A stretch of DNA of 63,936 nt, counting the filler, from Octopus bimaculoides (Eukaryota): NCBI RefSeq assembly GCF_001194135.2. It is 4 parts of 3 records of this genome, joined end to end, with 100 filler letters (N's around TTAATTAATTAA, not from the genome) between each part and the next. Parts side by side here need not be neighbours in the genome. Positions count along the whole stretch, not along the records: positions 1 to 26,207 come from NC_068982.1; 3 more parts are not named here. One strand, written 5' to 3'. Below are positions 12,700 to 26,137 of this stretch, piece after piece (position 1 is the stretch's first letter; each line of letters opens with the position of its first letter). The notes under the pieces were generated by a model. The model had not been told where the DNA came from. It saw only the letters and a list, made by a program, of their open reading frames with translations, and made no database searches. The position numbers and the translations under genes are program-made.

Positions 12700-14420
12700 A
12701 TCAAGAAACCCGAAAAAAAACAATAATCAATAAAATCAGAACATTAATTCACCAACACCCAGATTCCTCCACAGGTAAGGAAATAGACTACTTATTTAAC
12801 TGTGTAATGATAGATAGCAATTTCTACGGATTACCCAAGATCCACGAAAGCTCAGAAATACAGAGAGCCACAAATGAACATAAGAACCAATACAAAAAAT
12901 TACTAAGACCCGCTGATCTCAAATTGAGACCAATAGTTGCTGGGCCTCAATTCCCAACACAGGACTAAGTCAACTTTTGGATATACTCCTTAAGCCCCTA
13001 TGCTCATTAATACTCAGCTATATTCGAGATGACATGGATTTCCTCAAATACATTCCACCCACTGTCTCAGAAGGTATTATCCTTACAAGCCTCGACGTCA
13101 ATAATCTTTATACTAATATACCTCACACTTTGGGGGTTTGGAAGCAATCAAACACTTGGTAGAAAACATAGAGGTAAGATAAGCGAGCGCTTCAAAACGA
13201 ACTTCATTACCAAGAACGCACGCCTGATACTAGAAAAGAACACAGTTAGCTTTGATTGTAAAATATATCGTCAAATAAAAAGCACAGCTATGGTAATGAA
13301 ATTTGCTATGGTGACGAAATTTGCACAGCTATGGTGACGAAATAAGGTAACCTGGTTGTGGGTTTCTTAGAAGAAAAACTGTACGAGGAAGTAGAGAAAG
13401 ATTTTAACCAAAATTTCAAGAAATATGCCATTGAAAAGTGGAAACGATTAATCTACAAATATTTGATAACCTCCTCAACACTCTTCACCCATCTTTCAAA
13501 TTGGCGAAAGAAACCACTTATAATGACCTACTATTCTAGACTTTCGTGTAAAAATACGTGACTCCACAGTCGCAACGGATATCTTTTACAAAAACAAACG
13601 GACAAGCACCAATACTTGAACTTCTACTCTTGCCATCTTTCACACATTCCATACAGTATGGCAAGTATCTGTGTAATAGTTGTTGATACAAAAATACGTC
13701 AAATTCAACTTCATAAATTCAAATGCTTCCTAAAAACAGAATTACCGCTTAAAATTATTAAGTTATGGAATTATAAATGCGATGAAGCTGGACGTCACGC
13801 AACTGAGGACACCAAAGAAAACAAATTAAAGAAAATACTATTCCATTTACCAATACACACAATCCTGGAGTAACCAAGATGTTTCACACTATAAAAAGAA
13901 TTACCAAAACTCCTACAAAGCCTCAAAAGGAAAAAATTGGTTAATGAAAAGTTTTTACGAAACAATAAACGTCATCCACAAAATCTTTAATAACATCTCA
14001 CGCGGGCAAAATTCACACCAGAGAATAATTCAGAATTCTCCATGAAAGACTGTGGAGATAACAGATGTGGAACATGTAACAACAACTTCAAATATTTAGA
14101 CAGTGGTTCCCACATAAAATTCACAAGTGGATTCTCCTTCAAAATAAATGCAGATATGAACAGACGAAACCAACAATTCCCTTTGCCAACGTGCAACTTT
14201 CCACAGACAGCATATCAAACTAAAGGAATTACACAAGATTCTACTGAGTAAGCATCTGGAAATATATGGAGACGGCAAATTCATGCTATTTCCCTTCTAC
14301 AAATGTTCAAAGGATGACCCAAAGTTCCGAAGGCAATGGAACTACTTTTTATCAAAAGATTCTTACAGAAACTAAAAGTTTTAAACAAAAGGAAGGATAA
14401 TATTCGAGAACACTCTTTGA
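12700..14420 (+). mobile_element. Degenerate Penelope-like retroelement (RT + GIY-YIG)
   Basis: Frameshifted motifs NFYGLPKIH, LKLRPIVAGP, LTSLDVNNLYTNIPH, YRQIKSTAM, the Cys motif CGDNRCGTC, and the C-terminal HRQHI...SKHL...FPFY typical of the PLE GIY-YIG region. Confidence 0.85.
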
Positions 14421-14753
14421 AATTGAACAAGTTATGGACACTATTTTACATAGTTAACTCATACAAGTACTGTACCTAGCTAACTTTCCAATAAATACGG
14501 TTGGAGTAAAATTAAGCAAATGCGAGTACTTGAAAACTCAAGTTTGACCTTCTCCAAGCGTATCATTTTTTATAAAATTAATTAACATTGGGGCGAGGCA
14601 TGATTTCATTCTAAACTGGACTTGAACTTTTTGGATTTCTTTTATAGTTTATAACCGTGGATGTACTTGCTTAAGAATCACTTTTTCAATCATCAGCTAA
14701 CATTCAAAACACCTTGATGGTATAAAATATATATGCATGCATACAGATGTGTG

Positions 14754-14796
<43 letters not shown>

Positions 14797-17562
14797 GCGC
14801 GCGCGCGTGTCTATGAGTGTGTATGTGTGTAGATACGCAATGTGTGTAACTACTTCGTCCCTACTTTCAAGTTCGTGCCTCACAGCGTTCATACACACAT
14901 AATTTTTCTCGTCTGGCCGTAAAGCCTTTTCTGTTTGTTTTCCTGTCTTGTTTTTTGTCCGCCACTACATTCCTCCATGGCAAGATTTAATTTGTGTATA
15001 CAAATTTAATTTGCCGTCCATGGGAAGNNNNNNNNNNNNNNNNNNNNNNNNNNNNNNNNNNNNNNNNNNNNNNNNNNNNNNNNNNNNNNNNNNNNNNNNN
15101 NNNNNNNNNNNNNNNNNNNNNNNNNNNNNNNNNNNNNNNNNNNNNNNNNNNNNNNNNNNNNNNNNNNNNNNNNNNNNNNNNNNNNNNNNNNNNNNNNNNN
15201 NNNNNNNNNNNNNNNNNNNNNNNNNNNNNNNNNNNNNNNNNNNNNNNNNNNNNNNNNNNNNNNNNNNNNNNNNNNNNNNNNNNNNNNNNNNNNNNNNNNN
15301 NNNNNNNNNNNNNNNNNNNNNNNNNNNNNNNNNNNNNNNNNNNNNNNNNNNNNNNNNNNNNNNNNNNNNNNNNNNNNNNNNNNNNNNNNNNNNNNNNNNN
15401 NNNNNNNNNNNNNNNNNNNNNNNNNNNNNNNNNNNNNNNNNNNNNNNNNNNNNNNNNNNNNNNNNNNNNNNNNNNNNNNNNNNNNNNNNNNNNNNNNNNN
15501 NNNNNNNNNNNNNNNNNNNNNNNNNNNNNNNNNNNNNNNNNNNNNNNNNNNNNNNNNNNNNNNNNNNNNNNNNNNNNNNNNNNNNNNNNNNNNNNNNNNN
15601 NNNNNNNNNNNNNNNNNNNNNNNNNNNNNNNNNNNNNNNNNNNNNNNNNNNNNNNNNNNNNNNNNNNNNNNNNNNNNNNNNNNNNNNNNNNNNNNNNNNN
15701 NNNNNNNNNNNNNNNNNNNNNNNNNNNNNNNNNNNNNNNNNNNNNNNNNNNNNNNNNNNNNNNNNNNNNNNNNNNNNNNNNNNNNNNNNNNNNNNNNNNN
15801 NNNNNNNNNNNNNNNNNNNNNNNNNNNNNNNNNNNNNNNNNNNNNNNNNNNNNNNNNNNNNNNNNNNNNNNNNNNNNNNNNNNNNNNNNNNNNNNNNNNN
15901 NNNNNNNNNNNNNNNNNNNNNNNNNNNNNNNNNNNNNNNNNNNNNNNNNNNNNNNNNNNNNNNNNNNNNNNNNNNNNNNNNNNNNNNAACTTCAAATGTC
16001 ATTAACATCAGCCACTTTTGAAAAACCTACAAACCACAGACCATCATCAAATATAACAATTAAAGCCATCTTACAGAAGAAAAAACAAAGAAGACCCTCC
16101 TTTCTCTTTCTTTCTTCTTCCTTTCTCTCTTTCTCTTTTCTCTTTTCTGTCCCTCTTTCTATCTTCCTCTCTTTATTTCTCTCCTCAATTCTTTCATCTT
16201 TTCTATTTATACATACATATAGATAACAAAAAAAAAAAACATCCTATTCCAGATTTATATAAAAAGCAACGAAATTTTTTGTAAAACTTATATCTGAGGA
16301 GTTTCGATGAATGAGATGAAAAGTACTAATAAACAATTACCCAAAATTCGGACTATTTCGTTTTTTCTTCATACATAAAATTTATACAACACTTCAAACA
16401 ATCTACATATATATATACATACATTTAAAAATACACTTCAAAAGAAAATTTGAGGAATTATACGTTTATGTAGTCGCATAGTGCATCCTTAGTTTTGGCA
16501 TATAACCGGTCAGAACGTTACCATTAGTTTCACGTCTACTATTAAACCTGGCAATATTCACGACTCATCAGACAGGAAGCACATGGCCTCTGATAAAGCA
16601 CGTTCACTGGCTTATTGTTCGTTGGGCATTTGATTAGTGAGAGAGACGGAATACAATAATAAGGCTTGCACAACCATACAATATCCTTTCCGGGAGATGC
16701 AAACTATGGCTCTGAGGAATCGTTGTCCATTTTGTGAACAAGCGCATTGATAGGATTTCTGAAAGACTATCAAGATGCTTGCATGCTACTAAATGTACTT
16801 TCACACAATACAGTGGGCGTGAATTAGAGGAATCTTTGACTAAATTAATAACCACACTTTACCTAAATCTATGGCTGAATAACCACAACCTCTCCATTCT
16901 TATAAACACAATGCCACACTGGTTACTAACATCACTGGGATACTCCTTTGCCATTGTATACCGCTTAAAGTGAGAAAAATACCAACTTGAGTCTCTCAAT
17001 ATATATCCCTCATCGTCGGATGAAAACGCAAAATTATATGCCCATCTACACTGGTGATCCTTACCCAGGCATTGATGCTTTCTACAGGCTATCGCTTGTT
17101 TATTAGACATTTAAAAAAATAGAAATCTACATCGTCAGTATTTATGTCCATATTCATGACTGTACAACTGCTATAAATATACCAACCAAACCCAGTGAAC
17201 CGCGTAACAAAAATCTGTGACTCCTCACCAACTAGAGTCGTATCACTAGCCAGTAGTAGGCACTGACTTTATTAATATCTACTCAATTCTGTGTGCGAGT
17301 GTATGTGTGCCAAACAACACGTTTATATGTGCTTGTATGTGCGTGTGCATTTGTACGAGCGAGTGCATTTGTACGAGCGAGTGCACGTGCGCCAGACCAC
17401 GTATGTGTGGGCGTTTGTACTTCCATAGCTACTAACGGTTATATCTAATACTCGTTTTCGTTGTATTGTGTATTTGTTTCATTTTGGTATCTGATATTTG
17501 TTTTGGATCTTCTATTAGAATGAAGTTGTGTATCTTAATTTGCCACTTCTATATATATGAAG

Positions 17563-18304: not shown

Positions 18305-18310
18305 TTTATT
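18305..18310 (-). terminator. Putative polyadenylation signal AATAAA of the C19orf81-like gene
   Basis: TTTATT on the + strand about 40 nt downstream of the stop codon. AT-rich context makes a chance match possible. Confidence 0.4.
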
Positions 18311-18350: not shown

Positions 18351-18951
18351 TCACGTGACTTTTATTTTAAACTTTATTCTCTTGTTCTTTAGTTTCTTTG
18401 CTTGTTTCGTGCGTTCATCTTTTGATTTCGCAATCATAGCTTTCGCCTCCTTCACATATTGGTGGAGTTTATAAGCGTTGTGCTCCTCTAACATTACAGC
18501 ATCGAACGGTTTTACTGTGATTCGATCACTTCCTGCAATAGTTACACCACCTTTTACTAATGACTGGAAGTCTTCATTGTTACTTACACAAACAACCCAT
18601 CTATTTTTCGTATGAGAGTTACCAACAGCCACTGATACGGGGTCGAATCGAAGGCTGAGTAGCATAACCTCGGGGTACTGAGATTCTAATTCACGTTTAA
18701 TATCTTCATGAGTTATCTGAAGGTCAGAGTCACAAGCAAAACAAATGGTCAACGGCTGAGACTCTGGAAGCGTCTTACGCATACAGATTGTCGGAGGTTT
18801 CGTCTTTTTACTACGCAGCTTCGACTTTATATCAGCTACAAGTTTTTCTACTTTCTCTTGTTCGATACCATTCTCATCGTACCACATTAGTTGTTTTTTA
18901 ATTTCTTCTTCACTTACAGAAAGTCCGGTTGCAATTTTCACTTGCAAGCAT
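18351..18951 (-). CDS. C19orf81: Terminal exon (3 of 3) of a C19orf81/DUF4732-like gene
   Basis: Stop-free non-repetitive frame. Pyrimidine-rich acceptor tttattttttAG at 18953-18952 (phase 2); stop at 18353-18351. The peptide P.SQPLTIC...THEDIKRELESQYP...SLRFDPVSVAVG...NRWVVCV matches, from memory, human C19orf81 (P.SQPLCLC...TH....LEAQLP...SIRF....V.CG...NRWLIAV). Not database-checked. Confidence 0.72.
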
Positions 18952-19758
18952 CTAAAAAATAAAAAGAGGAATACCAATATAAACGCAATATGGAGGTATT
19001 CAGCATTCATTAATTTAACATGGCACTTAACTTTCACGAAGTTATCCAAGATGAAGTTACTTTAATAATTTGTATATTTATGAAACCGGGTAACATGAGT
19101 TTGCGTATTTACTACGCCAAGATTTTTTACTCCCAACGTAGGGGACGTAGGCAGAAACCCTTCATGATATTTATTTTGTTTGTGCCGTTCTGATGTTTAT
19201 GCTTTTTCATGGTAAGTAGCATATTAAGTGAAGAGAGTTGATGTCAACTTACTTGACTTAAGATAGAATCAAAAATTACAAGTTTAGGAATCCTTTAATA
19301 AAAGCTTTTAAAAGATCAGTTAATTTTTAAACACTACCAGTTGATACCTGCCTTCCATTAAAATATAACCTACTTACACCTTGCTTTTAAAACCACAATT
19401 AAAGAAGTATCAAGAAATGAAGCATACTCTCTTCGTTATTGTGTATATATCTTCAGATATATACTGATTTCTTTCTTCGATATCAAACGTCAGATATATT
19501 TGAAAAAAAAAATTGGAATGCCGTGACATTAACTTCAATCTCAAAAGGTAAATAGCGACGGGGGTGAGGCCAAAATTTGGGAATGATAAATTAGTCACGG
19601 TATCTTGTGTGATTCATCATAATTTTGGTGTTTATTTGACTAAACATGAAAGCCTTATGTTTCGAGAAATACGTATTAAGACGCTGAGTAATATGCGACT
19701 CATATAAGAACATTAGTTATTGTGTAATGAAGAAAATGTAAGACTGGAATGAACAAAC

Positions 19759-20332
19759 CTTGCACCAACTTTGTTTCCATTTAAAGAATAAGTCTTTTCG
19801 GAAATTATATTATTTTCAGCATCATCTCTACATGAAATCGGAATTATTGATTCGTTGGAGGTAAAATCTTTCGCTATCGTCTGTTTTTCATCTTTATTAT
19901 CGGAACTCCAAGTTCCGTAAGGTCGAAAACCAAGACTACGCAAGCGCTGGATTAAACTATTAGTATTTTCTTCATAAGAAGAGAGAGAATCAATTGAAGA
20001 CTGTTGATAATTGTCTGTATTTAGAGACATCACTGTCATATTATTGTGCAGAGCATTCAGTGACTGTAATGGCTTGTGAAATTGTTGAGATTTGCGAATT
20101 TCAAGAACAGGTTTTACTACTTCTACGGGATTTTGATCACTTGTCAAGTTCATTTGACTTTGATTGTAAGAACGTTGTGCATAGAATGAATTCTCAGTAA
20201 AGGATCGCGGCAGACGGGAAAAATATCGACCAGCGGTGAAATAATGGAGTTGAGCTGTCTTTGGCATCAAATAAATTAGATTTTTATCATCTGTCCTGGA
20301 GCAACAAAGTTTTGGATCAAATATGTTTCTGC
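19759..20332 (-). CDS. Internal exon (2 of 3) of the C19orf81-like gene, S/N/Q-rich
   Basis: Acceptor tctttttcAG at 20334-20333 (phase 1). The frame is open throughout. Donor AG|GTTTGT after 19759 is phase 2, matching exon 3 (AG+A = Arg). Confidence 0.62.
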
Positions 20333-20621
20333 CTGAAAAAGAATATTCAAGTTTTTCATCAATAATTCTTTAATATGAGATCAAAACTAAACAATACAGC
20401 TCTTTATATAGTTGTATAATCTTAAATTATCAAAATCCATCAAAAACATAAAGTTTACTCTGTAATCAAACACAAGACTAATTGTTTAAACGAAGCGAAG
20501 AGTTAAAAAAATCAATTCTAGTATATTATTGGTACGTGTGTTATCAATACTGAAAGGATGAAAGGAAAAGTTGATCTTGCAATATATAGAATCAGAACAC
20601 AGAGGGACAGATTTAAATAAT

Positions 20622-20747
20622 CTTTTCTACTCCAGGCACAAGGCCAGAAATTTTGGGGTAAGAGGCCAGTCGATTAGATCGACCCAGTACGCAACTGGTA
20701 CTTAATTTATCGACCCCGAAAGGCTGAAAGGCAAAGTCGACCTCGGA
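20622..20747 (-). mobile_element. 5'-truncated SINE family 1 nested in an older SINE
   Basis: 15-bp TSD ACAGATTTAAATAAT (20607-20621 / 20748-20762). Flanks rejoin into a degenerate SINE. Confidence 0.85.
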
Positions 20748-22771
20748 ACAGATTTAAATAATGTAAAATATTTAATCCAATGCTGGACCGTTTCTGCCAA
20801 CTTACTGCAGTTCTTCAGATATGTACTGATTTCTTTCTTCGATATCAAAAGTCAGATATATTTGAAAAAAAATTGGACTGCCGTAATATTAACTTCAATC
20901 TCAAAAGGTAAATAGCGACGGAGGTGAGGCCAAAATTTGGGAATGATAAATTAGTCACGGTATCTTGTGTGATTCATCATAATGTTGGTGTTTATTTGAC
21001 TAAACATGAAAGCCTTATGTTTCGAGAAATACGTATTAAGACACTATGTAATATGCGACTCATATAAGAGCATTAGTTGTGCATGGTCGTAGATATGGAT
21101 GTATGGCTAAGGTGCTTGGTTTGCGACCACATTGTCCAGGATTCAATTCCACTGCACAGCATCCCAAACAAGTGTCTTTTACCATAAACTCAAGATAGCC
21201 AGTGCCTTGTGGGTGGAATTTGGTAGATGGAAACTGTGCGGAAACTTGATATCGTGTGTGTATGTCTCTTATCCAAAGTGTATTGGTGAAAGATGTAAAA
21301 GAGGCGAGAAAACACGAAAACCCATGTTTTCCTATAAAAAAGTATTTATTCTGTCCGAGCTGTACAGACTATTCTTTTTCACCATCGCCGTAAGAAATAT
21401 AATGAATCAGTGAGTGACCAGCTGAGAACCTGTAACAGTGACATTACTATTGTTCATTAATACTAAACGGTGGGAATGAGTTGCATGAATGTGTGTGCCG
21501 AACAGGCAAAGAGCGAGAAAAATGTCTCTTTTTCTGAAAGGTAATCTTTACACTCATTTTCACTTTAAATAAGTACAAAAACAATAGTAATTGTTAGTGT
21601 CTCGCACAATAAAATTCGCAATCTCATAATCAAAAAGTGCTGTTAAATATTCACTTTCTTTTGATGATGGCCGTGTTCTTATAAAATTTTTGAAACTTCA
21701 ATTGGTGATGTCTTCTGTTTAAGGGTTAAAAACCATTCTAGAAGGATAAGAGGTAAAGTTGATTCAGCAGGATTTGGTCTCAGAATATAAAGAGACGTGA
21801 CTAATTACCACATGATATTTTGCTCGCCACTCCACCGCAAAGAACCCACACCTCTAATTCTACGTTATAATTCTATATAAGATCTTTAGTCTTATTTAAT
21901 TTAGCAAGTGTATAACTTGTAGAAAGAAAATATAGATCCTGCATGTACAACGCTAAATATACTTTTTTTTATAGAGTTAACCTAATTTGTAAACATCGAT
22001 ATGTGGTTGAAAAATAGCAAGGAACAGCTGTTGGTAATCGAACATATACATTTTTTGTTTGCTGCGCAAACGTCGTCATTTATACATTATACAGTTGCAC
22101 CTTTCTTCTCTCAAGCCGAAATACGAATGGTTCTGTGCCATATTAAACTGTCAATTAAACACATTAATCACGTCTTGTTTGTTTTCTCAGGAATTCGCCA
22201 CGAATGTAGTTATGCAGTGATAAACTTCTTTCACGTTTGTCTGACATTACAATGTTTCCCAAAGTGATCCGATGTATAAACGGACGTTAACTACGAAGAT
22301 GAATGAGTTATATACAAACGGCTGAGACTCCAAGTATTTTATTCCTCTATTCGTTTCAATTTCATGACTGCAGAAAGGTTCATACGAAGAGCTTCTGCAA
22401 AGTTTCCACCTGCCAAATTCCACTCAAGCACATCAGTCAAGAATATATTTTTAGCTATACTCTAAAATACTTAGGTAACTTGTAACCCATAGAGAGAACA
22501 TATGAGTCTAGCAAGTGCGACGCTAATTATATAGTCTGATATAGAATTAATGTTATTTCAAGTTCTTTTCTGTATCAAACTGATGCTTGTGTGTAAATCA
22601 GTAGATGAACTACAGATTCTATTTCGGCTCAAATTGTTTTCACAGTTAGAATATGTTCTATACAACCTTGAAATTTTTCAAAAGTGAACAAGAATGCTGG
22701 ATTGTTATCGAGCAACTTCTTTTAGCAAATTGTTTTTTATTGTCTACATATATTAAGAAGTTTTCACTTAC

Positions 22772-23270
22772 CTAATGAAAGATCAATAGAAATTTGGTTC
22801 CCAAAAATGCTAATGAAAAGTCCATTGTAGATGACAAAAACACGCCTTTGCAGAACATAAATATTAGCTCTTTCAACTTTACCTTTAGATATCTCCAACT
22901 TACCTGACAAAGAGCTTGTGTTACTGATTCGCAATGATGCTTTTGTCGGGTCATGTTTCTGAATAGCAGTCGAGGGCTCACGCTGATACAAGAACTCTAA
23001 AGAAGAATATAAAGAAGTTTTGGAGGGTTGCGTATTATCAGCCGAGCAAGTAGAGTTGCATTTGGTGCGACCAAAATATTCTGATTTGGAGGGTGATAAC
23101 CGATGATGGCAATATAGAGAACTCTCTGCAGAAGAATTCAGTGGCTGGTTTGTGTGGTTAGAATTTCTCCTTACAGACGACTGGAACTGATTGATCTCGG
23201 GTATATGTTGATTTAAAGGATTCGGACTGTCTACATTGAGTAGAATTAATGCTTGGCTTGAGGTGGGCAT
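22772..23270 (-). CDS. Exon 1 of 3 (first coding exon seen) of the C19orf81-like gene, S/N/Q/T-rich
   Basis: 180-codon open frame ending at a strong donor G|GTAAGT (exon end 22772, phase 1, matching exon 2: G+GC = Gly). Starts at ATG 23270, which follows a pyrimidine tract and cAG; an alternative in-frame ATG is at 23282. Confidence 0.62.
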
Positions 23271-23314
23271 CTGTTGAGACATAATGTAAGAAAACAAAAT
23301 GGGCAATCAGATAC

Positions 23315-23440
23315 TTTCAAATTTTGGCACAAGGTCAGTAATTTCAGGGGTGGGGGTAAGTCGATTACATCGGCCCCAGTGCTCAGCTGGTACTTATTTT
23401 ATCGACCTCAAAATGGTAAAAGGCAAAGTCGACCTCGATG
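23315..23440 (-). mobile_element. SINE family 1, 3' half, just upstream of exon 1
   Basis: Similarity to 12038-12251. Confidence 0.7.
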
Positions 23441-24241
23441 TGAGAAAATTATATTACCACAGATACGGTGTTGTAGTTTAATGTATTTGACAACAGTGAA
23501 AGAAACTGGTTATAACTAAATAACTTGATAAAAAAATGAATTTCAGTACCTTGTCATATGTATGGTAAACAGTGAAAATCGGAACAATGACAAGCATATT
23601 ATTTATTCTTAATACATTACGGCAGATTCAAACACGAATATGCTACTCGAAACAAAACAGCGATTAGCATTTTTGCATTCGAATCTGTCAGAACATATAA
23701 ATATGGAAGTCATCGTTTTGATAGTCGCTGTTCACCGTGAATATGACGATTTATTATTGGTTAGCAGATAACAGCACGGATCAACAAATAACTTGTTTGC
23801 CACTAAAGAAGAGCAATATATATAAGTCATCGAAAAATATTTTAATGTGTAAGAATAGCATAATAGATTATATTTATTTTAATGTTGGTTTAGGTATTGA
23901 TGTTTAACTGGCAGTCAAATTGACTGAAATTGATGTGTGTGTATATGTGTATGTATAGATAGATAGATTGATTGATTGATAGACCGACTGACAGATGCAT
24001 AGAATTTGTGTGCCTTTGGTCGGCCTGGGGTTCTAGTAGAAGATACTTGCCAAAAATGCCACGCTGTAGAACTGTACTAGAAACCACGTGGTTGTGAAAC
24101 AAACTTCTTACATCACAGCCAACAAACATGTCTGCGTCTATGTATGAATACTTTTGCCAAGAAAACTTATGAAACAATATACTGTATAAAGAAAATAGTT
24201 CCTGTGCTTAGGGATTCTAAACTACTACAACTACTACTACG

Positions 24242-24284
<43 letters not shown>

Positions 24285-24299
24285 GTAGTAGTAGTAGTC

Positions 24300-24343
<44 letters not shown>

Positions 24344-25337: not shown

Positions 25338-25553
25338 TAAAGGCGGCGGATTGGCAGAACCGTTTGCACACCGGACAAAATGCGTAGTGGAATTTCTTCC
25401 GGGTTTTTACGTTCTGAGTTGAAATGTCTCTCAGGTCAGCTATGCCATTCATCCTTTCGGGATCGATAAAATAAGTACCAGCTGAGCACTGGGGTTGATG
25501 TAGTCGACTAGCCTCCTCCCGCAACTTCTCAGGCCTTGTGCCTATAGTAGGAA
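25338..25553 (+). mobile_element. SINE family 1
   Basis: Similarity to 12038-12251. Confidence 0.75.
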
Positions 25554-26137
25554 AAAAAAATTTGTTGCGAGGTCAAGGACATTTGAGTGGAGCGAATTAT
25601 TTTTTTTATCGTGAAATATGAATAATGATTCCTTTTATAAGTAACTTGTGGCCTACGTGCAATTTTGCAGAAAATTGTAGCAACATTTCTATCTGCAAAT
25701 ACAACATATGTCCTTTTAATTCCTCAAAACATTTGTCGTCGTTTCAAAGCAAACATCACGCTTCCTTTAAGATATTGTATTCAATACACAGACTATTTTA
25801 TAAAAACCATTTCAGTTCATTTTTATTGCTGTTTGTGAATGAAATTGTTATTTGTTTGCTTTTCACTTATGTTTCAACGTTTTGTATGAGTGAATAGTCG
25901 ACAAACAGGCTTATCTCCAAATGACTATTCAGTTAGTATAAAAACTACCTTGATACACGAAGTGTTCATATACATACATACATACATACATACATACATA
26001 CATACATACATACATACATACATAGTCCATATGTGTGTGTATATAATGTTTGTTTTTATAAGTTTTCAAATGCCCTTCAACTTAGGCAAGTATTTCCAAC
26101 TATAGACCGGCACTAACTAATGATTTATGAGTTAAAA

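What the first reader, a model, noticed from the sequence alone, without database searches (positions are those of the whole stretch)
18351..23282. Phase-consistent 3-exon gene: C19orf81/DUF4732-like domain with a ~357-aa low-complexity N-terminal extension
Seen: the three longest non-repetitive minus-strand ORFs join through canonical splice sites with matching phases (1, then 2) into 1674 nt / 557 aa, followed by AATAAA. Known (from memory): human C19orf81 is a ~200-aa uncharacterised protein, and exon 3 reproduces its motif order. Inference: this is an invertebrate member of a functionally unknown family. It carries a large, probably disordered S/N/Q/T-rich extension and a basic C-terminal tail (KKLKNKRIKFKIK, possible NLS), suggesting a nucleic-acid-binding or condensate-forming protein.
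Basis: partly seen in the sequence, partly recalled or inferred. Interest (0 to 1): 0.7.

Follow-up and report, generated by a model that had tools for sequence, protein, structure and literature searches.

The report
Octopus DUF4732 (C19orf81-family) gene
This is a real, intact three-exon octopus gene for an uncharacterised protein of the DUF4732/C19orf81 family, already predicted in Octopus vulgaris, so it is an ordinary gene whose main interest is that nobody knows what the family does.

Summary
The window is octopus DNA, syntenic with O. vulgaris chromosome OX597815.1. Pfam DUF4732 is hit above its curated cut-off (33 vs 27 bits).

Two details need correcting. The conserved start is ATG 23270 (MPTSSQ...), because ATG 23282 reads ATA in O. 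vulgaris. Exon 1 most likely ends at the CAG|GTAAGT donor at 22904, not at 22772. The corrected CDS (23270..22904, 20332..19759, 18951..18351) encodes 513 aa and aligns without gaps, at 94.9% identity, to the annotated O. vulgaris protein.

The "extension" is not an octopus oddity. Long forms in bivalves, gastropods and cephalopods share an invariant N-terminal MPTSSQ, an LGFR motif and the C-terminal domain. AlphaFold2 gives a confident (pLDDT 94.5) helix / beta-alpha-beta-beta-alpha-beta / long-helix module. Its structural neighbours are almost all RRMs, but with weak E-values, and the canonical RNP aromatic residues appear absent. About 300 N-terminal residues are predicted disordered. Exon 3 is under strong purifying selection (dN/dS 0.06-0.14).

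Function remains inferred. My verdict is a new member of a known, uncharacterised family, of modest interest.

The parts
22904..23270 (-). Coding exon 1 (367 nt, aa 1-122 plus 1 nt, ends in phase 1). It starts at the conserved ATG 23270 (MPTSSQALILL = 23270..23238) and ends at donor CAG|GTAAGT.
   Evidence: It aligns without gaps to O. vulgaris P0001. MPTSSQ is invariant in 16 aligned relatives.
23271..23282 (-). Four in-frame codons (MSQQ) from an upstream ATG specific to this species.
   Evidence: ATG 23282 reads ATA in O. vulgaris. No relative carries MSQQ.
22772..22903 (-). It is most likely intron and at best an alternative exon-1 extension. It would encode a hydrophobic 44-aa insert.
   Evidence: Both donors are phase 1 and both are conserved. 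Identity is 91.5%, dN 0.082, omega 0.53, all intron-like. It is absent from the O. vulgaris model P0001.
20333..22771 (-). Intron 1 (remainder). It contains a SINE-like repeat copy (20617..20746) and the source copy of the duplicated segment (20812..21078).
   Evidence: 91-95% identity with indels against O. vulgaris. Repeats are shown.
19759..20332 (-). Coding exon 2 (574 nt, aa 123-314, ends in phase 2). It encodes the disordered region, including the conserved helix/motif LIQRLRSLGFR (aa 239-257 = 19985..19929).
   Evidence: Splice sites are conserved in O. vulgaris and in a third octopod, L003, whose only indel is 9 nt and in frame. The LGFR motif occurs in 14 of 20 long relatives.
18952..19758 (-). 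Intron 2. It contains a 269-nt lineage-specific duplicate (19450..19718) of the intron-1 segment.
18351..18951 (-). Coding exon 3 (601 nt, aa 314-513 plus stop). It encodes helix aa 328-359, basic linker 355-375, RRM-like core 370-462 (18785..18507), long helix 463-512, and basic tail 499-511 (18398..18360). The Pfam DUF4732 match covers aa 367-468 (18794..18489).
   Evidence: Pfam. AlphaFold2 pLDDT 94.5. Coordinates. dN/dS 0.06-0.14.
18305..18310 (-). AATAAA polyadenylation signal, 41 nt downstream of the stop codon.
   Evidence: Read directly. Conserved in O. vulgaris and L003.

Best explanation
This is an intact, selectively maintained, three-exon host gene of an Octopus species. It is the ortholog of the O. 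vulgaris 'hypothetical predicted protein' of 513 aa.

It encodes the mollusc 'long form' of the DUF4732/C19orf81 family, laid out as follows:
- an invariant N-terminal peptide, MPTSSQALIL;
- about 325 residues of mostly disordered, Ser/Asn-rich sequence, with a few short conserved islands (a hairpin at 102-117 and the LIQRLRSLGFR helix);
- a folded C-terminal module: helix, basic linker, a beta-alpha-beta-beta-alpha-beta core with an RRM-like fold, then a roughly 50-residue helix ending in a Lys/Arg-rich tail.

What is shown: gene structure, family membership, fold class, predicted disorder and selective constraint.

What is inferred: the protein acts as an adaptor or ribonucleoprotein component. 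In this reading the C-terminal module binds RNA (or a partner), chiefly through its basic flanks around a non-canonical RRM-like core. The short linear motifs of the disordered region then recruit other factors. By analogy with vertebrate C19orf81, a marker of undifferentiated spermatogonia, the germ line is the most likely place of action.
For: Gene and structure:
- 1046-bit hit to O. vulgaris P0001, which carries PF15876.
- The corrected CDS is 513 aa, gapless and 94.9% identical to P0001.
- Exons are 95-98% identical with no gaps, while introns are 91-95% identical with indels.
- Exon 2 and 3 splice sites and AATAAA are conserved in a third octopod.
- The same exon layout, with a 9-kb intron, appears in a more distant cephalopod contig. 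An intron-less 2069-nt contig (L001) carries the full 571-aa homolog, which fits a spliced mRNA.

Family:
- DUF4732 scores 33-36 bits against a gathering score of 27.
- There are 69 representatives at E<=1e-3, including named C19orf81 homologs.

Architecture:
- MPTSSQ is invariant in 16 aligned relatives and present in 15 of 20 representatives of 300 aa or more. LGFR occurs in 14 of 20.

Fold:
- AlphaFold2 gives pLDDT 94.5 and pTM 0.76 with beta-alpha-beta-beta-alpha-beta topology.
- The top 50 Foldseek PDB hits are almost all RRMs, for example the CFIm68 RRM (TM 0.68, rmsd 3.2 A over 85 columns), eIF4B, U1A and the LINE-1 ORF1p RRM. The viral library gives the same picture.

Disorder.

Constraint: exon 3 omega is 0.06-0.14, against 0.45-0.6 for exons 1 and 2.

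Basic flanks: aa 463-513 has pI 10.1, and the linker reads KSKLRSKKTK.

Germ-line analogy: C19ORF81 is listed among markers of human undifferentiated spermatogonia defined by single-cell RNA-seq (PMC13003925). The Human Protein Atlas antibody against it was used in the human testis atlas (PMC6274646).
Against: Against RNA binding:
- No Foldseek hit reaches E<=1e-3 (best 0.015).
- No family member hits Pfam RRM_1.
- Profile-profile comparison with a small RRM alignment gives only 14.7% probability.
- In that alignment register, and by the strand alternation pattern, the RNP1 aromatic positions are Arg and Val, and the invariant Trp faces the core. The canonical RNA-stacking surface therefore seems absent. 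This is inference, because no model coordinates were available.
- The core itself is acidic, pI 5.6.

Other gaps:
- No octopus expression data could be consulted, so tissue and splice-isoform usage are untested.
- No experimental function exists for any family member. No held paper mentions DUF4732.
- Orthology to vertebrate C19orf81, as opposed to paralogy, was not resolved.
Confidence: 0.55

Rival explanations
1. Translation starts at ATG 23282 and exon 1 runs to the donor at 22772. This gives a 561-aa protein with an extra MSQQ and a 44-aa hydrophobic insert.
For: Both features exist and are in frame. The 22772 donor has GTAAGT, is phase 1, and is retained in O. vulgaris. The 44 codons stay open in both species. 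ATG 23282 has A at -3 (read).
Against: ATG 23282 is ATA in O. vulgaris. MPTSSQ is the annotated N-terminus of 14 relatives. The O. vulgaris model uses the 22904 donor, whose CAG|GTAAGT is the full consensus. The 132 nt diverge like intron, and 8 of their 12 differences change the amino acid. No relative has a matching insert.
Confidence: 0.12
2. The gene and fold are as described, but the RRM-like core is a protein-protein interaction module (a pseudo-RRM, as in UHM-type or eIF3b-type RRMs). The long C-terminal helix mediates oligomerisation. The protein does not bind nucleic acid directly.
For: The RNP1/RNP2 aromatic residues appear absent. The core is acidic, pI 5.6. A roughly 50-residue helix follows beta-4. 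There is no RRM_1 sequence signal.
Against: Strongly basic segments flank the core on both sides and are conserved as basic in relatives. Structural neighbours are overwhelmingly RNA-binding RRMs. Atypical RRMs without RNP motifs can still bind RNA (established knowledge, not tested here).
Confidence: 0.3
3. The ORFs are not a functional host gene. They are chance ORFs, a pseudogene, or a transposon-derived ORF (for example a LINE ORF1p-like protein, which also has coiled coil plus RRM).
For: LINE-1 ORF1p RRM structures are among the Foldseek neighbours (2w7a, 2ldy). The surrounding introns are full of interspersed repeats.
Against: The locus is single and syntenic, with introns at conserved positions in three octopods and a more distant cephalopod. 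Reading frames are intact and exon 3 has omega 0.06-0.14. There is no reverse transcriptase or other transposon ORF nearby. Relatives are annotated as ordinary genes across molluscs, echinoderms and vertebrates.
Confidence: 0.02

Closest known systems
O. vulgaris 'Hypothetical predicted protein' (P0001; chromosome OX597815.1, assembly GCA_951406725.2)
   Same: This is the ortholog. It has 513 aa, a gapless 94.9% identity, the same three coding exons, a syntenic locus and a precomputed PF15876 hit.
   Different: There are 26 amino-acid substitutions, 22 of them in the first 313 residues. The window species has an extra in-frame upstream ATG and a 269-nt duplication in intron 2, and its introns are shorter overall (gene span 4.9 vs 6.15 kb).
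Vertebrate C19orf81 (human C19orf81, mouse 1700008O03Rik; named homologs in bat, lungfish and elephant shark)
   Same: It shares the DUF4732 domain: a helix, the RRM-like core with P..P, H, RW, G and DD..E landmarks, and a C-terminal helix. Identity is 22-30% over the domain, with E 1e-8 to 1e-4. Function is unknown in both.
   Different: The vertebrate proteins are about 200-220 aa. They lack the MPTSSQ N-terminus, the LGFR motif and the roughly 325-aa disordered region. Orthology versus paralogy was not resolved.
Mollusc long-form DUF4732 proteins (for example Lottia XP_009056050, Haliotis XP_067676430, Saccostrea XP_062620110, Dreissena XP_052238524)
   Same: The architecture is identical: N-terminal MPTSSQ(A)LIL, a Y.RL..LGFR motif, a C-terminal DUF4732 domain and a basic tail.
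   Different: Overall identity is only 18-24%. The G(Y/F)(R/K)G.L.(F/Y)D....W hairpin motif is degenerate in octopus (aa 102-117). All are annotated only as uncharacterised.
Canonical RRM (Pfam RRM_1) and atypical RRMs (for example xRRM or UHM types; this second comparison is from memory and untested)
   Same: It shares the beta-alpha-beta-beta-alpha-beta fold. RRMs dominate the structural neighbours. A helix directly follows beta-4, as in several atypical RRMs.
   Different: There is no significant sequence or profile similarity. The RNP1/RNP2 aromatic residues appear replaced, and the core is acidic. RNA binding has not been shown.

Membership tests
Pfam PF15876 (DUF4732) | Score against the family HMM at or above the curated gathering cut-off (27 bits) | tested here: met
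   The 561-aa model scores 33 bits (E 8e-8), exon 3 alone scores 35.8 bits, and the 172-aa domain scores 36.2 bits. The match covers profile positions 44-149 of 159. 42 of 60 aligned relatives also hit it, best E 4.5e-71.
Pfam PF15876 (DUF4732) | Direct sequence homology to proteins named C19orf81 homolog | tested here: met
   phmmer of exon 3 against 1.84 billion representatives returns shark, lungfish and bat 'C19orf81 homolog' proteins at E 1e-8 to 1e-4.
C19orf81 orthogroup (strict ortholog of the vertebrate gene) | Same domain architecture (about 200 aa, domain only) | tested here: not met
   The octopus protein has 513 aa, with a conserved N-terminal peptide and a roughly 325-aa disordered region that the vertebrate members lack.
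C19orf81 orthogroup (strict ortholog of the vertebrate gene) | Phylogenetic or syntenic orthology | not tested
   No tree was built and no vertebrate locus was available. Molluscs carry several paralogs (two each in Pinctada and Mytilus, tandem genes in Batillaria), so one-to-one orthology is uncertain.
Mollusc long-form DUF4732 proteins (informal group) | N-terminal MPTSSQ, an LGFR motif and a C-terminal DUF4732 domain with basic tail | tested here: met
   All are present in the corrected octopus protein and in 14-15 of 20 representatives of 300 aa or more.
RRM (RNA recognition motif, Pfam RRM_1 / RRM fold) | beta1-alpha1-beta2-beta3-alpha2-beta4 fold | tested here: met
   The AlphaFold2 model (pLDDT 94.5) has elements E41-46, H54-64, E70-76, E89-95 and H98-107, followed by bridge or strand marks between residues 109 and 121 that the tool does not list as a strand of 3 or more residues and that I read as beta-4. 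In the full-length model this strand is E460-462. Foldseek neighbours are nearly all RRMs, with probability 0.95-1.0 and TM up to 0.68, but E is never better than 0.015.
RRM (RNA recognition motif, Pfam RRM_1 / RRM fold) | RNP1 and RNP2 consensus with solvent-exposed aromatic residues on beta-3 and beta-1 | tested here: not met
   hhalign places NRWVVCV on RGQAFVIF. The exposed RNP1 positions are therefore R and V, and W432 is core-facing. Beta-1 reads x-V-C-F-x-L, with the hydrophobic residues on the core face. This rests on sequence register and alternation, not on coordinates.
RRM (RNA recognition motif, Pfam RRM_1 / RRM fold) | Significant sequence or profile match to RRM families | tested here: not met
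   None of 60 members hits RRM_1 at E<=1. hhalign probability is 14.7%. A PDB sequence search finds nothing below E 0.17.
RRM (RNA recognition motif, Pfam RRM_1 / RRM fold) | Binds RNA | not testable with these tools
   This needs EMSA, CLIP or a complex structure.

The most novel reading that the evidence does not exclude
DUF4732 could be an unrecognised, ancient bilaterian class of non-canonical RRM-like domain. Its ancestral protein would be the long form kept in molluscs, with a shorter form in echinoderms that starts MPISSS.

In this reading the strictly conserved N-terminal peptide (Pro exposed after Met removal) acts as a position-dependent signal. It might be a Pro/N-degron read by the GID4/CTLH ligase, or a docking peptide, controlling the abundance of a germ-line ribonucleoprotein scaffold. 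Vertebrate C19orf81 would then be a truncated descendant.

The degron idea comes from my own knowledge of the Pro/N-degron pathway and is untested. In-frame upstream ATGs in this window and in the L001 transcript argue somewhat against a strict requirement for the free N-terminus.
Probability: 0.12. Interest if true: 0.55.

Novelty: new member of a known kind. Interest (0 to 1): 0.28.

Why it matters
C19orf81/DUF4732 is one of the human 'dark' protein families. In humans it marks undifferentiated spermatogonia, yet it has no known biochemical activity.

The octopus gene itself is ordinary and already predicted in a sister species. Placing it among its relatives yields three usable leads for the whole family:
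- The domain has a confidently predicted RRM-like fold flanked by basic helices.
- Invertebrate members keep a much longer architecture, with an invariant N-terminal hexapeptide and an LGFR motif. These are candidate short linear interaction motifs that are invisible in the mammalian proteins.
- Selective constraint is concentrated on the C-terminal module.

Together these give concrete constructs and residues to test: W432, the R-M-R-K-x-L-P segment, the basic tail and the N-terminal Pro.

Tried and rejected
- The first word-indexed homology search, with the full 561-aa protein, found only 2 proteins. A search with the 60-sequence domain alignment found only 6. The exhaustive representative search was needed to see the family.
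- PDB sequence search with the domain profile found nothing meaningful. The best hit was mitochondrial uL2 at E 0.17.
- No held paper mentions DUF4732, and 1700008O03Rik appears only in gene lists. The C19orf81 papers I opened also give only lists or antibody tables.
- Rfam, tRNA and tandem-repeat scans of the window found nothing related to the gene.
- I tested RNA structure as an explanation for the lack of synonymous change in exon 2. The fold z-score is -0.10, so this is rejected for the exon on its own.
- The readings 'chance ORFs', 'pseudogene' and 'transposon ORF' are rejected on synteny, conserved splice sites, intact frames and dN/dS.


Full report
**1. What is in the sequence**

The minus strand between 23306 and 18351 carries three ORFs of 180, 185 and 232 codons. 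These are the longest minus-strand ORFs in the piece that do not consist of N runs or microsatellites.

- donor TTAG|GTAAGT after 22772;
- acceptor TTTTTCAG| before 20332;
- donor CAAG|GTTTGT after 19759;
- acceptor TTTTTTAG| before 18951.

The phases are 1 and 2. AATAAA lies at 18310..18305.

**2. Organism and orthology**

The translated model hits an O. vulgaris 'Hypothetical predicted protein' (P0001, 513 aa, precomputed Pfam PF15876) at 1046 bits. Fetching that locus (L002, chromosome OX597815.1) shows the whole window to be collinear with it at 88-97% identity. The window therefore comes from a close relative of O. vulgaris.

Against O. vulgaris, the three exons are 95.0%, 97.9% and 96.7% identical with no gaps. 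The introns are 91-95% identical and carry indels.

**3. Corrections to the model**

The O. vulgaris protein starts at MPTSSQ and joins ...SSLSG|RNIFDPK. The base-by-base alignment shows three things:
- ATG 23282 is ATA in O. vulgaris, so the shared start is ATG 23270.
- A perfect-consensus donor, CAG|GTAAGT, sits after 22904, also in phase 1. This is the one the O. vulgaris model uses.

Those 132 nt behave like intron. Identity is 91.5%, 8 of the 12 differences (Nei-Gojobori counts) change the amino acid, and dN is 0.082, against 0.03-0.04 in the rest of the N-terminal half. They would insert a hydrophobic stretch that no relative has.

The corrected CDS is 23270..22904 / 20332..19759 / 18951..18351, which is 1542 nt and 513 aa. 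It aligns to P0001 without gaps at 94.9% identity. I cannot exclude the long exon 1 as a minor isoform, because no octopus RNA data were available.

**4. Cross-species support for the exon structure**

A Logan contig from a third, more distant octopod (L003, 80-85% identical) contains exons 2 and 3. It has the same acceptor and donor sequences, its only exonic indel is an in-frame 9-nt deletion, and it has the same AATAAA.

A more distant cephalopod relative (P0002, 571 aa, 51% identical in the domain) is encoded without interruption on a 2069-nt contig (L001). This is the pattern expected of a spliced mRNA.

In yet another cephalopod genome contig (L004), the segments matching P0002 aa 120-352 and 367-559 lie 9 kb apart. 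The breakpoints fall at the positions of the octopus introns.

**5. Selection**

Nei-Gojobori estimates against O. vulgaris give omega 0.06 for exon 3 (16 synonymous, 4 non-synonymous changes) and 0.45 for exon 1. Exon 2 shows 12 non-synonymous and no synonymous changes.

Against L003, exon 3 has omega 0.14 with dS 0.27, and exon 2 has omega 0.58 with dS 0.11. The folded C-terminal part is therefore strongly constrained, while the N-terminal part evolves fast at the protein level.

The shortage of synonymous change in exon 2 is unexplained. Exon 2 alone shows no unusual RNA folding (z -0.10).

**6. Family**

Pfam DUF4732 is hit above the gathering score: 33-36 bits against 27, covering aa 367-468 of the corrected protein.

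An exhaustive phmmer search of exon 3 against 1.84 billion representatives finds 69 proteins at E<=1e-3. Cluster look-ups name them as follows:
- 'uncharacterized' proteins of bivalves, gastropods, a chiton and a cuttlefish;
- sea urchin and sea cucumber proteins of 235-255 aa;
- 'putative uncharacterized protein C19orf81 homolog' of elephant shark, lungfish and bat, about 200-220 aa.

**7. The N-terminal 'extension' is a conserved architecture**

Of 20 representatives with 300 aa or more, 15 contain MPTSSQ. In 14 it is at residue 1, and in the L001 transcript contig it is at residue 23. 14 of the 20 contain an L(G/S)F(R/N/P) motif preceded by Y.RL.

In a 16-sequence full-length alignment (sequences I chose because they start MPTSSQ), the only invariant columns are M1-P2-T3-S4-S5-Q6 and W432. 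The two echinoderm representatives start MPISSS.

Octopus keeps the N-terminal peptide and LIQRLRSLGFR (aa 247-257). It has only a degenerate version of a third motif, G(Y/F)(R/K)G.L.(F/Y)D....W.

**8. Structure**

AlphaFold2 on the 172-aa C-terminal part, with a 60-sequence alignment, gives mean pLDDT 94.5 and pTM 0.76. The model runs helix, linker, beta1-alpha1-beta2-beta3-alpha2-beta4, then a roughly 50-residue helix.

Foldseek against the PDB gives no hit at E<=1e-3. The top 50 (E 0.015-0.09, probability mostly 0.9-1.0) are nevertheless almost all RRM domains: eIF4B, Prp24, LINE-1 ORF1p, U1A, U2AF, CFIm68 (TM 0.68, rmsd 3.2 A), La and Sxl. The viral library gives RRM proteins as well.

Sequence-level homology to RRMs is not demonstrable:
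- no RRM_1 hit in 60 members;
- nothing in a PDB sequence search.

The hhalign register puts the invariant Trp on the core-facing Ala of RNP1. It puts Arg and Val on the two RNA-stacking positions. Beta-1 reads x-V-C-F-x-L. I infer that the canonical RNP surface is absent, though I had no coordinates to check this.

The core is acidic (pI 5.6), whereas the preceding linker (KSKLRSKKTK...MRK) and the last 51 residues (pI 10.1) are basic.

The full-length model has pLDDT below 50 for residues 14-102, 117-243 and 257-325. Small islands of higher confidence lie at the N-terminus, at 102-117 and at the LGFR helix.

**9. Mechanism**

Shown: a maintained gene for a protein with a long disordered region carrying short conserved motifs, plus a constrained RRM-like C-terminal module with basic flanks.

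Inferred: an adaptor or ribonucleoprotein role, with RNA or partner binding by the C-terminal module and recruitment through the linear motifs. A germ-line context is suggested only by analogy. Human C19ORF81 is listed among scRNA-seq markers of undifferentiated spermatogonia (PMC13003925), and its antibody was used in the testis atlas (PMC6274646). The mouse ortholog 1700008O03Rik appears only in a list from a bone-density screen (PMC7822523).

The main functional rival is a protein-binding pseudo-RRM. Readings as a transposon, pseudogene or chance ORFs are rejected.

**10. Verdict**

The gene is a new member (an ortholog in another species) of a known but uncharacterised family.

Confidence by claim:
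- gene and family: about 0.97;
- RRM-like fold: about 0.8;
- nucleic-acid-binding mechanism: about 0.35.

Noticed in passing
window 19450-19718 and 20812-21078 (minus-strand introns 2 and 1): A 269-nt piece of intron 1 is duplicated (95.2% identity) into intron 2, starting about 40 nt downstream of the exon-2 donor. O. vulgaris and the third octopod L003 have only the intron-1 copy, so the duplication is specific to this lineage.
   Followed up: yes
window 19759-20332 (exon 2): Against O. vulgaris, exon 2 has 12 non-synonymous and 0 synonymous differences over about 121 synonymous sites, while exon 3 has 16 synonymous differences. Against L003, dS is 0.11 in exon 2 and 0.27 in exon 3. The exon alone has no unusual RNA fold (z -0.10). 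Constraint linked to cephalopod RNA editing or to splicing enhancers is possible but untested.
   Followed up: partly
window 3771-3968, 4377-4494, 6653-6792, 11389-11592, 12030-12260, 20617-20746, 23357-23437, 25340-25554: A SINE-like interspersed repeat of about 200 bp occurs at least 8 times in the window and many times in the O. vulgaris locus, at 68-92% identity between copies. One partial copy lies 90-170 nt upstream of the start codon. ARAGORN and Rfam do not recognise it.
   Followed up: partly
window 23271-23282: A species-specific in-frame upstream ATG (ATA in O. vulgaris) would add MSQQ in front of the otherwise invariant MPTSSQ N-terminus, if the transcript includes it.
   Followed up: partly
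window 13629-14694, next to the N run at about 15000-16000: About 1.07 kb matches O. vulgaris (L002 18839-19902) in inverted orientation relative to the otherwise collinear alignment. It is either a small inversion between species or a scaffolding artefact beside the assembly gap.
   Followed up: no
window about 2800-3000, 7000-7100 and 15000-16000: There are runs of N (assembly gaps). The largest one produces spurious ORFs of 330-410 codons.
   Followed up: no
window 1-84, 7351-7446, 14748-14830, 24221-24343, 26133-26207: Long microsatellites are present: (AAT)28, (TG)48, (TG)41, (ACT)21 adjoining (TAG)20, and (TAA)25. The piece begins and ends in trinucleotide repeats.
   Followed up: no
L002 8400-9834 (O. 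vulgaris) against window 23389-23437: O. vulgaris carries about 1.4 kb of extra sequence, rich in the SINE-like repeat, just upstream of the gene. It is absent from the window. The O. vulgaris gene span is 6.15 kb against 4.9 kb here.
   Followed up: no
Batillaria attramentaria proteins P0022 (BaRGS_00013935) and P0093 (BaRGS_00013933): A long-form and a short-form DUF4732 gene lie two gene models apart on one gastropod contig. Pinctada and Mytilus also have two members each. This suggests tandem duplication and diversification of the family in molluscs.
   Followed up: no
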